64,000 bases of DNA from Trichoplax adhaerens (taxonomy: Eukaryota; Animalia; Placozoa): the NCBI RefSeq assembly GCF_000150275.1, contig NW_002060971.1:473487-537486 (forward strand). The letters run 5' to 3'. Every line of letters starts with the position of its first letter. The first letter of the stretch is position 1. A program made the position numbers and the translations under genes. Below the pieces are notes generated by a model. That model was not told where the DNA came from. It ran no database searches and worked only from the letters and a program-made list of their open reading frames with translations. Below, in pieces: positions 6,481 to 38,091 of the stretch.

Positions 6481-6731
6481 TTACTCGTTATTACGACATA
6501 TGCAAGATTTTATAACTAAAACAGAGATATTTTTAGTAGATCCATTACGACATGATGTATTTACTTTTACTACTTTGGTTTTGTCAACTTTACAGCAATG
6601 CTTGTCATGTTTACATCCTCCTTCACATTTACCAACGTTTATTTTCTTTTGTGATTGGCATGTTCCTTCAGTATTAGTGATATAATTCTTTTGAGCCAAT
6701 CTTCGACACTCTAACGGTTTGCCAATACCGC
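6481..6731 (-). CDS. Terminal exon: C-terminal cystine knot (CTCK)
   Basis: The cysteine spacing C...C...CEGGC...CC...C...CIC then TAA matches the CxGxC, CC and CxC pattern of CTCK domains. Confidence 0.8.
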
Positions 6732-36700: not shown

Positions 36701-38091
36701 GGCAATTTTTAAGTTACTAAGATTATATAACATAGGAAATGATCTTTTGTAGCAGATATACTATTTACGGAAGGCTTAATAGGATTGTTGTTTTAACTAG
36801 ATACGATATTTATACTTTTATCATCGGGTAAAATTCCTTACCCTTGCACTGATCACCACTGCTTTTAAAGCCTGTCTTACAAACACATTTATAAGACCCC
36901 TTAGCATTGACACATTTCTGTGTGTTGCTACTGCAACGATGAACATTACTGGCGCATTCATCAATATCTAGATGACATAATGGCAGGATTTGTATCAGTT
37001 CGAATAACACTTCATGATAGCAATACATAATAGGTATACGAATCGTGAAAATACAGTTGGTAAGTGAATCTAATTCACGATCATTATTTTTCAATATTAT
37101 TGTGTATTAGTTATTAATCCGTAAATAAATTATAACAACTAGAGTTATTATTAACATATCATACAATTTCAAATGGTTAATTATTTACTTTGTATAAAAA
37201 TAATTACTTTACGTTTAGATTTACCTTTGCAAACTTTCCCACTACCTTCATAGCCAGCCTTGCACTTGCACAGGTATGATCCAGGCTTATTTAGGCAAAC
37301 AGCATTAGAATCGCAAGGTTTGTCTACGCATTCATCGATATCTGTACATTTATAGCCATTTCCTGTAAATCCTGTATTACATTTGCAAAACCAGCGGTCG
37401 CCTAATTCACGACATGATGCACTAGCATGGCATTGATTACATACATCTTTGTTCGAGATGCCACCTGCAGTAAGATTATAGATAGCAATTAACCCTTGTA
37501 AGAGTAGTTACGGTAGCAAAATAGAAATATGACAACAACTAGAATTAATCTATATCTTTGAGTCGATTTTGTATAAAGTGCCGCGAATATCAAAATAAAA
37601 TAAGAAATCGTTTAGAATATATATGAGCAATATCGAAGTTATTATTTTTCAATTTATAACTTTTCAGCAAAAATTTAGTAAATATCTTTTGCTATACTTT
37701 ACGTCCATTACATTAAATTATTGTAGTCAATAGTGACTGCCAATGAACAAAAAAATTTATAGTAAATACTCAAGTGAGATTGGAATATAGACTATAAGTT
37801 CTAGATAGAAGGAATTAGATTCTCTAGGATTAATTGTATTGAAGCGAAATTAGATCTCACGATCGTCAATTTTATTCCTATGGGTTAGTAAAGAGATCAA
37901 TCCGCAAGTTAGATTATGAAACAATTATTAATATCATTTTAGGATCAATAGCAACAAATTATGAAGATTTATAGATATTTCTAGTTTGATAGAGCCCTAA
38001 GGCTACATTAATGATTGTTGATTGAGTAATTTTTACCTGTTGCAACGTAAACGAAGCTAATTAAGCAAATTAAAATTGTCAATTTCGCCAT
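6481..38091 (-). CDS. Giant multi-exon secreted extracellular protein (~82 exons, ~4,500 aa): SP-EGFx10-FBG-like(CASPR type)x7-EGFx3-VWD-C8-TIL-EGFx~43-FS/Kazalx2-TSP1-FS/Kazal-CTCK
   Basis: Exon 1 (38037-38091) reads [19 protein letters not shown], a signal peptide ending in a phase-1 GT donor. It is followed by a run of phase-compatible GT-AG exons down to the terminal exon 6481-6731 ending in TAA. I found no internal stop or second signal peptide in the chain. Confidence 0.85.
6825..7040 (-). CDS. Third follistatin-N/Kazal exon
   Basis: It reads [13 protein letters not shown]...CTC...[21 protein letters not shown]...YEGKC and is 216 nt. Confidence 0.9.
7123..7278 (-). CDS. Thrombospondin type-1 (spondin-like) exon, absent from the ORF track
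   Basis: It reads [52 protein letters not shown], with WxxWxxC, CSxxCG and RxR motifs. It is 156 nt, AG/GT bounded and phase 1. Confidence 0.9.
7391..7950 (-). CDS. Two follistatin-N/Kazal exons (7732-7950 and 7391-7621)
   Basis: The motifs VCGTDGATY and [15 protein letters not shown]...NC are each preceded by a FOLN-type cysteine pattern. Exon lengths are 219 and 231 nt, both phase 1. Confidence 0.9.
8023..22570 (-). CDS. C-terminal EGF array: ~42 mostly calcium-binding EGF domains in ~40 exons
   Basis: Repeated phase-1 exons follow D[IV][DN]EC...C...C.N..GS[YF].C.C..G[YF].G[DN]G..C. Exons 15739-15981 and ~11800-12064 each encode two EGFs. Confidence 0.9.
13535..13830. repeat. Intronic degenerate tandem repeat, ~105-bp unit x ~3
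   Basis: The string agatcaacgtag..ctag..gaattt..gagtaaga.ggtattaaa.aaatt.atattga.ataagttta..aagaaa recurs at ~13536 and ~13643, with a more decayed copy at ~13749. Confidence 0.75.
14034..14083. other. 50-N assembly gap with duplicated flanks
   Basis: There is a run of 50 N, and 13939-13997 duplicates 14084-14141. Confidence 0.95.
14861..15426. repeat. Tandem duplication (~280-bp unit x2) containing a decayed partial EGF exon
   Basis: 14861-15137 aligns with 15138-15426. The functional [12 protein letters not shown] corresponds to [12 protein letters not shown] followed by a stop in the copy. Confidence 0.8.
21261..21618 (+). mobile_element. Solo LTR, family A copy 1 (358 bp), intronic and antisense to the host gene
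   Basis: It has TGTAA...TTACA termini and the 4-bp TSD AGTA (21257-21260 and 21619-21622). TATAAA lies at 21438-21443 and AATAAA at 21545-21550. It is ~98% identical to the reverse complement of 56934-57291. Confidence 0.9.
23135..24717 (-). CDS. VWD + C8 + TIL + short Cys-rich (TILa/VWC-like) + EGF module
   Basis: VWD motifs are [13 protein letters not shown]...[10 protein letters not shown] and [16 protein letters not shown]8 is [22 protein letters not shown]...SYATAC...[11 protein letters not shown] is [18 protein letters not shown]...[10 protein letters not shown]...CIKASQCGC. Confidence 0.9.
24810..25617 (-). CDS. Three EGF exons between the fibrinogen-like array and the VWD domain
   Basis: The exons read [12 protein letters not shown]..., [12 protein letters not shown]... 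and [12 protein letters not shown]... Confidence 0.85.
25715..34390 (-). CDS. Seven tandem CASPR/Neurexin-IV-type fibrinogen-like domains (19 exons)
   Basis: Each ~200-aa unit follows the pattern PxxC..GxYxIDPDG...PF...CD..GxTxIxH...Y...Q...S..CxQ...YxC...W...G....WG...CxCG...C...CNCD...DxG....LP[VI]..[LI]G.LxC. Approximate unit spans are 32785-34390, 31767-32650, 30739-31526, 29474-30171, 27796-28678, 26724-27727 and 25715-26594. Confidence 0.85.
28766..28995 (-). mobile_element. Non-autonomous Helitron-like element (intronic)
   Basis: The minus-strand 3' end is the hairpin CCGTC-agcaaagc-GACGG, then 9 nt, then CTAG|T. The putative 5' end lies in an ATATATAT run. Confidence 0.5.
33980..34010. 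repeat. (TA)n microsatellite
   Basis: About 15 perfect TA units inside an intron. Confidence 0.95.
34578..37464 (-). CDS. N-terminal EGF array: 10 EGF domains (mostly calcium-binding) in 9 exons
   Basis: Exon 37225-37464 encodes two EGFs ([44 protein letters not shown]...). Eight ~120-130 nt phase-1 exons follow, mostly starting D[IV][DN]EC. Confidence 0.9.
38037..38091 (-). CDS. Exon 1, signal peptide of the giant extracellular protein
   Basis: ATG GCG AAA TTG ACA ATT TTA ATT TGC...GCA ACA G|GTAAA has a basic N-terminus and a hydrophobic core. It joins in phase 1 to exon 2 (37225-37464). Confidence 0.8.

What the first reader, a model, noticed from the sequence alone, without database searches (positions are those of the whole stretch)
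6481..38091. Unrecognised giant mosaic extracellular protein combining mucin/VWF-type, CASPR-type, fibrillin-type and agrin/spondin-type modules
Seen: one phase-compatible exon chain runs from a signal peptide to a cystine knot with no transmembrane segment. It contains ~56 EGF, 7 fibrinogen-like domains, VWD-C8-TIL, 3 FS/Kazal, TSP1 and CTCK. Known: VWD-C8-TIL and CTCK are the multimerisation modules of VWF and gel-forming mucins, and cbEGF arrays form Ca2+-stiffened rods in fibrillin. I saw no fibrillin TB domains and no mucin PTS region. Inference: this is a secreted polymer-forming matrix, mucus or adhesive protein in which EGF rods replace the glycosylated spacer. Gene predictors would probably fragment it or label it fibrillin-like.
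Basis: partly seen in the sequence, partly recalled or inferred. Interest (0 to 1): 0.85.

Follow-up and report, generated by a model that had tools for sequence, protein, structure and literature searches.

The report
Giant conserved EGF-FReD-VWD matrix protein gene
This stretch of the Trichoplax genome is one 82-exon gene for a secreted protein of about 4,480 residues, built from known matrix modules, that belongs to an unnamed, unstudied family also found in molluscs, ribbon worms and flatworms; it is not a mucin substitute or a fibrillin.

Summary
On the minus strand, ATG 38091 to stop 6481-6483, 82 GT-AG exons form one stop-free chain of 4,479 codons. It encodes a signal peptide, 56 EGF domains (47 fit the Ca-binding consensus), seven CASPR-type FReD domains, VWD(GDPH)-C8-TIL-TILa, Kazal-Kazal-TSP1-Kazal and a 9-Cys cystine knot. 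I found no TM segment, TB domain or PTS region.

Spliced RNA contigs from three studies join FReD5-7, three EGF, the D assembly and the following EGF exons. The Trichoplax sp. H2 model 'Fibrillin-2, partial' matches exons 1-40 at 91-100%. The assembly gap lies in an intron between two phase-1 EGF exons, and a collinear tandem paralog shows no exon missing there.

New here:
- A full tandem paralog (62% identity) lies just downstream.
- The same domain order occurs in molluscs, a nemertean and a flatworm, all uncharacterised, so this is an unnamed conserved family.
- The FReD fold is closest to the procollagen C-propeptide (COLFI).

The VWF/mucin-style polymer reading is weakly supported. There is only one D assembly, and placozoan mucocytes express a separate PTS mucin. 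A CTCK-linked dimeric rod is more likely, but that is inference.

The 3' half has no direct RNA evidence. The scan noted the FReD block of this same stretch before (s1-742984).

The parts
38037..38091 (-). Exon 1: start codon and signal peptide ([18 protein letters not shown]|G)
   Evidence: The same N-terminus and the same exon 1/2 junction are in H2 model P0195.
34578..37464 (-). Exons 2-10: N-terminal block of 10 EGF domains. The first exon holds two; all junctions are phase 1.
   Evidence: Pfam EGF_CA/EGF_3; P0195 match.
32785..34390 (-). FReD/COLFI-type repeat 1 (exons 34390-34218, 33704-33446, 32967-32785)
   Evidence: The first exon gives sub-threshold COLFI 24.1 and Fibrinogen_C 21.2 bits. 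P0195 match.
31767..32650 (-). FReD/COLFI-type repeat 2 (exons 32650-32573, 32309-31767)
   Evidence: The AF2 model of the large exon has pLDDT 92.8. Its best solved match is procollagen C-propeptide 5k31, Z 12.3.
30740..31525 (-). FReD/COLFI-type repeat 3 (exons 31525-31442, 31258-30740)
29474..30171 (-). FReD/COLFI-type repeat 4 (exons 30171-30074, 29978-29474)
27797..28678 (-). FReD/COLFI-type repeat 5 (exons 28678-28608, 28537-28237, 28030-27797)
   Evidence: RNA joints 28237|28030 and 27797|27726.
26725..27726 (-). FReD/COLFI-type repeat 6 (exons 27726-27652, 27534-27434, 27329-27163, 26999-26725)
   Evidence: All four junctions seen in spliced RNA contigs of runs X4, X5 and X9; frames.
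25715..26594 (-). FReD/COLFI-type repeat 7 (exons 26594-26520, 26440-26225, 26044-25715)
   Evidence: RNA joints.
24809..25615 (-). Three EGF exons between the FReD array and the VWD domain (25615-25490, 25267-25124, 24931-24809)
   Evidence: RNA joints 25715|25615, 25124|24931 and 24809|24717.
24035..24717 (-). VWD domain in two exons (24717-24554, 24478-24035). It carries the GDPH Asp-Pro autocleavage motif near its start and a CGICGNFNG motif.
   Evidence: Pfam VWD 49.7 and 79.4 bits. GDPH is conserved across most of the family. The intron 24553-24479 is fixed by RNA contig length accounting.
23737..23929 (-). C8 domain exon
   Evidence: Pfam C8 72 bits; RNA joints on both sides.
23443..23645 (-). 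TIL domain exon
   Evidence: Pfam TIL 40.3 bits; RNA joints.
23135..23309 (-). TILa (E module) plus one EGF; completes the D assembly
   Evidence: Pfam TILa 33.7 and EGF_3 31.8 bits; RNA joint 23135|22570.
14128..22570 (-). Exons 38-56: 20 cbEGF domains, all phase 1-1. The 992-nt intron 21788-20797 is where the H2 contig and model end.
   Evidence: The RNA contig reaches exons 39-40. One-to-one collinear with the paralog. No reads were laid on exons 41-56.
14034..14083 (.). Assembly gap inside the intron between exons 56 and 57. It is flanked by a 61-nt near-identical repeat (13939-13999 = 14084-14144).
   Evidence: The paralog shows the flanking exons adjacent.
8019..13521 (-). Exons 57-77: 22 EGF domains, including the irregular one at 10716-10600
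   Evidence: collinear with the paralog. No direct RNA evidence.
7732..7940 (-). FS/Kazal domain 1
   Evidence: Pfam Kazal_2 28.4 bits; 67% identical to the paralog.
7391..7621 (-). FS/Kazal domain 2
   Evidence: Pfam Kazal_2 44.7 bits.
7123..7278 (-). Thrombospondin type 1 repeat
   Evidence: Pfam TSP1_spondin 56.9 bits.
6825..7040 (-). Kazal domain 3
   Evidence: Pfam Kazal_2 49.6 bits.
6481..6710 (-). C-terminal cystine-knot-like domain with 9 Cys (C..C..CxGxC..CC..C..CxC) and the stop codon at 6481-6483. An AATAAA/ATTAAA-type signal starts at 6436.
   Evidence: Pfam Cys_knot 22.7 bits, below the cut-off of 24. Eight of the nine Cys columns are kept in at least 10 of 12 family members aligned; Trichoplax, its paralog, the molluscs and Macrostomum keep all nine, and Lineus lacks some. 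Poly(A) signal.

Best explanation
The interval is a single gene of Trichoplax (H1-type assembly) for a secreted mosaic extracellular protein of 4,479 residues. It is one of two tandem paralogs. It belongs to an unnamed animal protein family with a fixed domain order: signal peptide, N-terminal EGFs, seven CASPR/COLFI-type fibrinogen-related domains, three EGFs, one D assembly (VWD with GDPH, C8, TIL, TILa), a calcium-binding EGF rod of variable length (3 domains in molluscs, 43 here counting the EGF fused to TILa, 52-63 in a flatworm and a nemertean), then Kazal-Kazal-TSP1-Kazal and a 9-cysteine knot.

Shown here: the gene structure, the domain content, splicing of the central third, the paralog and the cross-phylum family.

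Inferred mechanism:
- The protein is secreted.
- The cbEGF arrays form Ca2+-stiffened rods.
- The VWD domain cleaves itself at GD|PH, leaving two associated fragments.
- The odd-numbered cystine knot links two chains tail to tail.
- The product would be a long dimeric rod that presents two seven-domain FReD heads for binding matrix, cell-surface or glycan ligands.

On this reading it is a structural or adhesive matrix component, not a VWF/mucin-type end-to-end polymer.
For: Gene structure:
- 82 GT-AG exons, phase-compatible, no stop.
- 56 EGF pattern hits on the minus strand against 0 on the plus strand.
- Pfam domains as listed.

RNA:
- One 4,425-nt spliced contig (X4), plus contigs of X5 (declared RNA-seq) and X9, from three studies.
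- They carry 15 listed CT..AC (minus-strand GT..AG) joints that link FReD5-7, EGFx3, VWD, C8, TIL, TILa and EGF 22570-22445, and they run on for about 249 nt, which equals exons 39+40.

Independent gene models:
- H2 P0195 matches exons 1-40 at 91-100% identity.
- H2 P0239 'Fibrillin-1', 4,339 aa, is one model of the paralog. It spans FReDx7 to CTCK.

Paralog:
- It lies at C1386, about 471.6 to 444.4 kb, on the same strand.
- 78 of 82 exons can be placed in one collinear chain, at a mean 62% identity.

Family:
- The same domain order is found in Pecten, Lottia, Crassostrea, Dreissena, Mercenaria, Babylonia, Physella, Lineus (5,886 aa) and Macrostomum (4,265 aa).

FReD identity:
- The profile hits echinoderm neurexin-4/CNTNAP2 at 1e-38 to 1e-34.
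- Pfam COLFI scores 75 bits on P0195.
- Fold match to procollagen C-propeptide: VIA Z 12.3, rmsd 3.7 over 155 residues, next best Z 6.2; Foldseek E 2e-6.

Other features:
- 47 of 55 regex-detected EGFs fit the Ca-binding consensus.
- GDPH and most of the nine CTCK cysteines are conserved across the family.
- GDPH autocleavage of VWD domains is established (PMC10880436).
Against: - No reads were laid on exons 41-82, so continuity of the 3' half rests on phase logic, the paralog's single gene model and the orthologs.
- Both the H2 model and the X4 contig stop at exon 40, next to a 992-nt intron that another note says holds a solo LTR.
- The cystine knot is below Pfam's threshold.
- The homodimer prediction gave no verdict.
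- Cleavage, dimerisation, ligand binding and cell type are all untested.
- The tree did not place the Trichoplax FReD repeats with position-matched spiralian repeats. Orthology therefore rests on the shared domain order.
Confidence: 0.72

Rival explanations
1. One reading: a VWF/gel-forming-mucin-like polymer (mucus or glue) in which cbEGF rods take the place of the glycosylated PTS spacer. CTCK would dimerise the chains and the D assembly would multimerise the dimers.
For: VWD-C8-TIL-TILa and a CTCK-like end are present. The protein is secreted and very large. One RNA contig had a high depth figure in run X4, though that table says depth cannot rank genes.
Against: There is only one D assembly, it lies in mid-chain and it carries GDPH. 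The N-terminal D1-D2-D'D3 set that makes mucin/VWF multimers (PMC6739602) is absent. No VWC domains are present. [quoted passage not shown] In molluscs the EGF 'spacer' is only 3 domains long.
Confidence: 0.12
2. The interval holds two or more genes, or alternative transcripts. One unit would end after exon 40 (EGF-FReD-VWD-TIL protein), and a separate EGF-Kazal-TSP1-CTCK unit would follow.
For: The H2 model P0195 and the X4 RNA contig both end at exon 40. No RNA was laid on the 3' half.
Against: The H2 model ends because its contig ends 783 nt later. Exons 41-77 are all phase 1-1 EGF exons, and no ATG/signal-peptide exon or stop was seen among them. The paralog is annotated as one 4,339-aa protein running through to CTCK. 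Mollusc, nemertean and flatworm proteins join the same parts in the same order.
Confidence: 0.06
3. A large secreted pattern-recognition or opsonin-type lectin. The seven FReD domains would bind microbial glycans, as in other invertebrate FReD proteins, and the rest would serve as a scaffold.
For: Kamm et al. list '2 large proteins related to fibrillin' among the FReD genes they discuss under placozoan innate immunity (PMC6321704). The profile also hits many small single-FReD proteins of 160-450 aa; I did not check them for signal peptides.
Against: The fold is COLFI/CASPR-type, not the ficolin/intelectin type. The classical fibrinogen-C glycan-binding subdomain was not matched: PDB profile hits cover only the N-terminal part. 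The fixed number and order of domains across phyla is unlike fast-evolving immune lectins.
Confidence: 0.1

Closest known systems
Uncharacterised spiralian proteins with the same architecture (e.g. Pecten maximus XP_033732371.1, Lottia gigantea V4AG22/LOTGIDRAFT_230443, Crassostrea gigas LOC105335200, Lineus longissimus XP_064643492.1, Macrostomum lignano PAA83517.1) and the Trichoplax sp. H2 models 'Fibrillin-2, partial' and 'Fibrillin-1' (RDD42651.1)
   Same: The whole collinear domain order is shared: EGFs, 7 FReD, 2-3 EGF, VWD (GDPH in most)-C8-TIL, EGF array, Kazal-Kazal-TSP1-Kazal and a 9-Cys knot. Identity to the placozoan over FReD-to-TIL is 27-31% at 96-100% coverage.
   Different: The N-terminal EGF count differs (10 here, about 5 in molluscs). 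The central EGF rod differs in length (43 here, 3 in molluscs, 52-63 in the flatworm and nemertean). None has a name, a paper or a known function.
Fibrillins
   Same: Long arrays of calcium-binding EGF domains joined by one-residue linkers. Database pipelines gave this gene fibrillin names.
   Different: There is no TB or hybrid domain; placozoans lack the TB domain altogether (PMC3308698). Fibrillins have no FReD, VWD, Kazal, TSP1 or CTCK.
VWF / gel-forming mucins, and other D-assembly proteins (FCGBP, zonadhesin, alpha-tectorin)
   Same: A VWD-C8-TIL-TILa assembly with a GDPH motif, and a C-terminal cystine knot. These were the best hits outside the family, by the D assembly only, at 17-26% query coverage.
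   Different: It has a single D assembly instead of three or four or more. It has no N-terminal D1-D3, PTS, VWA or VWC domains.
CASPR / CNTNAP / Neurexin-IV
   Same: The FReD repeats are of the type found once in these proteins. The profile hits Antedon and Strongylocentrotus neurexin-4/CNTNAP2 at 1e-38 and 1e-34.
   Different: No discoidin domain, laminin-G domain or transmembrane segment is present. There are seven tandem copies instead of one.
Fibrillar procollagen C-propeptide (COLFI, PDB 5K31, 4AE2)
   Same: It is the closest solved fold (VIA Z 12.3; Foldseek E 2e-6, TM 0.55-0.58). Pfam COLFI passes its threshold on the H2 ortholog.
   Different: There is no collagen triple helix upstream, sequence identity is 12-14%, and trimerisation was not tested.
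Agrin / follistatin-type FS-Kazal modules and spondin-type TSP1
   Same: Three 10-Cys FS/Kazal modules and one TSP1 repeat lie at the C-terminal end.
   Different: There are no NtA, laminin-G, SEA or reelin/spondin domains. Only the module types are shared.

Membership tests
Unnamed EGF-7xFReD-VWD-EGFn-Kazal-TSP1-CTCK family (spiralian 'uncharacterized proteins') | Collinear order EGFs / 7 FReD / 2-3 EGF / VWD-C8-TIL / EGF array / Kazal-Kazal-TSP1-Kazal / cystine knot | tested here: met
   Domain maps from blastp with the window's own domains against 15+6 proteins; window model.
Unnamed EGF-7xFReD-VWD-EGFn-Kazal-TSP1-CTCK family (spiralian 'uncharacterized proteins') | GDPH motif at the start of the VWD domain, and 9 conserved Cys in the C-terminal knot | tested here: met
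   Alignment of 12 C-termini and the GDPH contexts. GDPH is missing in Macrostomum and Physella.
Unnamed EGF-7xFReD-VWD-EGFn-Kazal-TSP1-CTCK family (spiralian 'uncharacterized proteins') | Position-by-position orthology of the seven FReD repeats | tested here: inconclusive
   Mollusc and nemertean repeats group by position (SH-aLRT 93-99 for positions 1, 2, 4, 6, 7). The Trichoplax repeats stay unresolved near the base.
Fibrillin / LTBP | TB (8-Cys) and hybrid domains interspersed among the cbEGFs | tested here: not met
   No PF00683 at E<=0.01 in P0195 (ortholog of exons 1-40) or P0239 (full-length paralog). Exons 41-77 of the window are each a single EGF, two of them a double EGF.
Fibrillin / LTBP | Tandem calcium-binding EGF arrays | tested here: met
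   47 of 55 regex-detected EGFs fit the D-x-D/N-E-C ... D/N ... F/Y consensus; Pfam EGF_CA.
VWF / gel-forming mucin | N-terminal D1-D2-D'D3 assemblies for disulfide multimerisation | tested here: not met
   Only one VWD-C8-TIL, at about residue 1,990 of 4,479.
VWF / gel-forming mucin | Central PTS (mucins) or VWA domains (VWF) | tested here: not met
   The maximum S+T+P in any 40-aa window is 30%. No VWA appears in the Pfam scans.
VWF / gel-forming mucin | C-terminal cystine knot that dimerises | tested here: inconclusive
   The Cys pattern fits CxGxC...CxC, but Pfam Cys_knot scores 22.7 against a cut-off of 24. The homodimer prediction gave no verdict.
CASPR / CNTNAP / Neurexin-IV | Discoidin (F5/8C) domain, four laminin-G domains and a transmembrane segment around one FReD | tested here: not met
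   None of these appears in the Pfam scans of the window's non-EGF exons, of P0195 or of P0239. No TM-like stretch lies outside the VWD core.
CASPR / CNTNAP / Neurexin-IV | CASPR-type FReD sequence | tested here: met
   The profile of the window's repeats hits neurexin-4/CNTNAP2 of Antedon and Strongylocentrotus at 1e-38 and 1e-34 over the whole domain.
Fibrinogen-related / COLFI domain superfamily | Sequence-profile and fold match to solved members | tested here: met
   - Profile against PDB sequences: procollagen I C-propeptide 9e-7, fibrinogen beta/gamma 2e-5, N-terminal part only.
- Fold: 5k31 Z 12.3; 4ae2/5k31 E about 2e-6.
- Pfam COLFI 75 bits on P0195.
Fibrinogen-related / COLFI domain superfamily | Classical Fibrinogen_C (PF00147) membership | tested here: not met
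   Only 21.2 bits against a cut-off of 22, on one exon. It is not listed for P0195. No fibrinogen C domain is among the top 50 VIA matches.

The most novel reading that the evidence does not exclude
This is a founding member of an ancient, still unnamed matrix-protein family. The family would predate the split of placozoans and bilaterians, keep a fixed seven-domain COLFI/CASPR-type head plus a self-cleaving D assembly and a cystine-knot tail, and appear lost from vertebrates, arthropods and nematodes. In placozoans, which have no visible basal lamina, its two highly conserved copies could be a main structural or substrate-adhesion component.
Probability: 0.5. Interest if true: 0.6.

Novelty: new variant of a known kind. 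Interest (0 to 1): 0.45.

Why it matters
Placozoans are a key group for asking which extracellular-matrix proteins the first animals had, yet they show almost no visible matrix. This gene and its tandem twin are intact, and for this gene the central third was seen as spliced RNA. Their full domain order is kept in molluscs, a nemertean and a flatworm.

That points to a real, old and unstudied matrix protein family. Automatic annotation hides it under 'fibrillin', 'zonadhesin' or 'uncharacterized'.

It also shows that the CASPR-type 'fibrinogen-like' domain has the fold of the collagen C-propeptide. That gives a concrete hypothesis about oligomerisation or ligand binding that can be tested.

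It corrects the appealing but weakly founded idea that this is a mucin without a mucin domain.

Tried and rejected
- **Home-made splice-site/codon DP gene finder.** It either added spurious micro-exons or skipped real ones in the FReD and VWD parts. I replaced it there with junction enumeration, RNA joints and the H2 model.
- **phmmer of one FReD exon against PDB sequences.** Nothing meaningful.
- **First AF2 run with 10 window-only rows.** pLDDT was 50, so it was unusable. A 55-row alignment gave 92.8.
- **The search for homologous proteins with the C-terminal cassette of the Pecten protein.** Only close molluscs came back, because word sensitivity is too low. It could not find a placozoan C-terminal fragment.
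- **H2 contig for the gap.** The contig ends 783 nt after exon 40, so it does not reach the gap.
- **CTCK homodimer prediction.** No verdict; this is not evidence either way.
- **FReD repeat tree.** It does not resolve placozoan-spiralian positional orthology.
- **Accession-number and keyword searches and supplement searches.** No paper names this gene or its relatives.
- **Joined spliced protein.** It was never assembled into one sequence or sent to any search tool. Frames were checked exon by exon with only the 1-2 carried bases. Searches used exon references or database proteins (P0195, P0239, P0005).
- **Fibrillin identity.** Rejected, because there is no TB domain.
- **Gel-forming mucin identity.** Rejected, because there is a single D assembly and no PTS.

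
Full report
**What is there**

The window is AT-rich (about 31% G+C) and has one assembly gap, at 14034-14083. Six-frame translation shows a long series of cysteine-rich open segments on the minus strand only, between 38.1 and 6.5 kb. An EGF cysteine-pattern regex finds 56 matches on the minus strand and none on the plus strand. One match lies inside the TIL domain. One irregular EGF at 10716-10600 was found separately and confirmed by Pfam EGF_CA (37 bits).

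Most EGF domains sit on their own exon with phase-1 boundaries on both sides. The acceptor G completes the Asp codon of the D-x-D/N-E-C motif.

**Gene model**

I combined these exons with junctions chosen by paralogous repeat comparison and by RNA. This gives 82 exons from ATG 38091 to stop 6481-6483.
- All introns are GT-AG and all phases are compatible.
- There is no in-frame stop over 4,479 codons.

Frames were followed exon by exon, carrying only the one or two split-codon bases. The joined protein was not built, and it was not sent to any search.

The order is:
- signal peptide;
- 10 EGF;
- 7 FReD-like repeats;
- 3 EGF;
- VWD, C8, TIL, and TILa with 1 EGF;
- 42 EGF;
- Kazal, Kazal, TSP1, Kazal;
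- a cystine-knot-like end.

Pfam supports VWD, C8, TIL, TILa, Kazal x3 and TSP1 above threshold. Cys_knot is just below it, at 22.7 against 24. Of the 55 regex-detected EGFs, 47 fit the calcium-binding consensus. No 40-residue window exceeds 30% Ser+Thr+Pro. The only strongly hydrophobic 19-mer lies in the VWD beta core. A poly(A) signal follows the stop by 45 nt.

**The gap**

The gap lies in the intron between exon 56 (14241-14128) and exon 57 (13521-13396). Both exons are phase 1-1, so the reading frame is independent of what the gap holds.

The 61 nt to the right of the gap comprise the last 17 nt of exon 56 and the first 44 nt of the intron. They recur at 13939-13999 with 60/61 identity. 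The left copy carries a stop 13 codons before its pseudo-donor. This looks like a local duplication or an unmerged contig overlap, not a usable exon.

The tandem paralog described below has the two corresponding exons adjacent, and it has the same total of 56 EGF. So there is no sign of a hidden exon.

**RNA**

Twenty runs were listed for 22400-28399. Three declared RNA-seq runs hold 32-38% of its words, roughly the exon share of this stretch. I laid four runs from four studies on it.
- X4 gave one spliced contig of 4,425 nt.
- X5 (declared RNA-seq) and X9 gave shorter contigs with the same joints.

Fifteen listed joints, all CT..AC on the plus strand, link these exon boundaries: 28237|28030, 27797|27726, 27652|27534, 27434|27329, 27163|26999, 26725|26594, 26520|26440, 26225|26044, 25715|25615, 25124|24931, 24809|24717, 24035|23929, 23737|23645, 23443|23309 and 23135|22570. 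Contig length accounting fixes the remaining introns, 25489-25268 and 24553-24479.

So FReD 5-7, the three EGFs, the whole D assembly and the next EGF exons are on one mRNA. The contig continues for about 249 nt, the summed length of exons 39 and 40. X8 contained unspliced pieces and is probably DNA or pre-mRNA.

No reads were laid on exons 1-21 or 41-82.

**Organism and existing models**

The assembly has 105.6 Mb in 1,414 contigs. Earlier notes of this scan call it Trichoplax adhaerens.

I checked this in one way. The protein 'Fibrillin-2, partial [Trichoplax sp. H2]' (P0195, 2,505 aa) matches my exons 1-40 one after another at 91-100% identity, most exons at 97-100%. It includes the same signal peptide and the same exon 1/2 junction. 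It is partial because its contig ends 783 nt after exon 40.

Kamm et al. mention '2 ... large proteins related to fibrillin' among the H2 FReD genes, and say nothing more about them (PMC6321704).

**A tandem paralog**

Searching the assembly with the FReD profile found a second set of seven repeats on the same scaffold and strand, 7-14 kb below the window's start. I fetched 50 kb. It holds a complete second gene with the same layout, GDPH included.
- It runs from about C1386:471.6 kb to 444.4 kb.
- 72 of 81 best exon hits are collinear.
- 78 of 82 exons can be placed in one chain.
- Mean identity is 62%.

In H2 this paralog is annotated as one protein, 'Fibrillin-1' (RDD42651.1, P0239, 4,339 aa). 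It runs from the EGFs through FReDx7, the D assembly and 43 EGFs to Kazal-Kazal-TSP1-Kazal-CTCK. Its N-terminus looks mis-modelled. That is independent support that such a chain is one gene.

**A cross-phylum family**

A profile of the window's FReD exons (A1) was run against 1.84 billion representative proteins. It found 2,259 proteins at E<=1e-3. Several of the best have seven matched stretches.

I mapped them with the window's own domains. The same collinear architecture appears in these taxa:
- bivalves, gastropods and a chiton, about 2,500-2,700 aa with only 3 EGFs after TIL;
- the nemertean Lineus longissimus, 5,886 aa with 63 EGFs;
- the flatworm Macrostomum lignano, 4,265 aa with 52 EGFs.

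A partial Saccoglossus model has EGFs followed by at least six FReDs. No cnidarian, sponge, ctenophore, vertebrate, arthropod or nematode protein with full coverage appeared in the two word-based searches. That is not proof of absence.

All members are 'uncharacterized', 'hypothetical', 'Fibrillin-2' or 'Zonadhesin' by automatic naming. None of twelve accession or locus names occurs in the paper library.

GDPH at the start of the VWD domain is conserved in most members, and so are most of the nine cysteines of the C-terminal knot.

In a tree of single FReD repeats, mollusc and nemertean repeats group by position. The Trichoplax repeats are unresolved. The case for orthology with the placozoan gene therefore rests on the shared domain order and count.

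**What the 'fibrinogen-like' domains are**

Single large exons give no Pfam hit. The first exon of repeat 1 gives sub-threshold COLFI and Fibrinogen_C hits.

The evidence on their identity is:
- The profile hits echinoderm neurexin-4/CNTNAP2 over the whole domain at 1e-38 to 1e-34.
- On the H2 ortholog, Pfam COLFI passes its threshold (75 bits).
- A 55-sequence profile hits procollagen I C-propeptide (9e-7) and fibrinogen beta/gamma (2e-5) in the PDB. These hits cover only the N-terminal subdomain.
- An AF2 model of the 180-residue exon of repeat 2 has pLDDT 92.8.
- Foldseek puts procollagen III/I C-propeptides first, at E about 2e-6 and TM 0.55-0.58.
- An exhaustive VIA alignment gives 5k31 Z 12.3 (rmsd 3.7, 155 residues). 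The next best match is Z 6.2, and no fibrinogen C domain is in the top 50.

The domains therefore belong to the fibrinogen-related/COLFI superfamily, with the COLFI fold.

**How it probably works**

Shown: the protein has a signal peptide, no membrane anchor and the domains listed above.

Inferred from established knowledge of the modules:
- cbEGF arrays form Ca2+-stiffened rods, as in fibrillin.
- VWD domains with GDPH cleave themselves between Asp and Pro (PMC10880436).
- Cystine knots with a spare cysteine make disulfide-linked dimers, as in VWF and mucins.

The odd count of nine conserved cysteines fits dimerisation. The homodimer prediction gave no verdict.

End-to-end polymerisation as in VWF or mucins needs the N-terminal D assemblies (PMC6739602), and these are absent. 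[quoted passage not shown]

My best reading is a tail-to-tail dimeric rod with two seven-FReD heads that acts in matrix or adhesion. I give the gene-and-family part high confidence and the mechanism about 40%.

**Surroundings**

- Upstream on the same strand lie exons of a class C GPCR. A 7tm_3 fragment is at 44351-44662 (sub-threshold Pfam hit). The H2 locus shows ANF_receptor plus 7tm_3 before the gene.
- An intronless cytochrome P450 is at 58781-57306.
- Between the stop at 6481 and the window start there is no sizeable ORF. The paralog begins about 1.9 kb below the window start or a little closer; its first exon was not located.

**Verdict**

It is wrong, or unsupported, about a mucin-like polymer.

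The finding is not a lone oddity. It is a member, with a twin, of a conserved but unnamed family. I rate it a new variant of a known kind (mosaic matrix proteins of known modules), with moderate interest.

Noticed in passing
G000:C1386:444438-471577 (loci L010-L012), just below the window start: A complete tandem paralog of the gene lies on the same strand. It has 56 EGF, 7 FReD, VWD(GDPH)-C8-TIL, Kazal-Kazal-TSP1-Kazal-CTCK and 62% mean identity. It is annotated in Trichoplax sp. H2 as 'Fibrillin-1' (RDD42651.1, 4,339 aa), apparently with a mis-modelled N-terminus.
   Followed up: yes
window 13939-13999 and 14084-14144: A 61-nt near-identical repeat (60/61) lies on the two sides of the assembly gap. 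It includes the last 17 nt and the donor site of exon 56. It is either an unmerged contig overlap or a local duplication.
   Followed up: partly
window 20797-21788 (intron 40): This is one of the largest introns of the gene (992 nt). Another note of the scan places a solo LTR at 21261-21618. Both the H2 gene model and the longest RNA contig stop at the exon just before it.
   Followed up: no
window 44351-44662 and neighbouring minus-strand ORFs up to about 52 kb; L001:1-4684: The upstream neighbour on the same strand is a class C GPCR (ANF_receptor + 7tm_3 in the H2 locus; a sub-threshold 7tm_3 fragment in the window).
   Followed up: partly
window 57306-58781 (minus): An intronless 491-aa cytochrome P450 ORF (Pfam p450, 361 bits).
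   Followed up: partly
G000:C1399:509769-510323, C1399:572697-573251, C1398:325613-326143, C1408:4927902-4928462, C1414:6958864-6959406: Five further single CASPR/COLFI-type FReD exons lie elsewhere in the genome (E 1e-33 to 1e-29). They presumably belong to other genes, perhaps a CASPR-like receptor or small secreted proteins.
   Followed up: no
Proteins P0019, P0026, P0017 (sturgeon 'versican core protein-like', bichir and shark uncharacterised proteins): Vertebrate proteins outside the CNTNAP family carry two CASPR-type FReD domains, and a jellyfish 'fibrillin-2-like' protein (P0035/P0171) interleaves four of them with EGFs. The domain type is much more widespread than its name suggests.
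   Followed up: no
window 22308-22337 (exon 39 start), runs X4 and X5: RNA contigs differ from the window at the first codons of exon 39: a silent ACC for ACA in X4, and Ile for Thr in X5, which is labelled as a different organism code. This is strain or haplotype variation.
   Followed up: no
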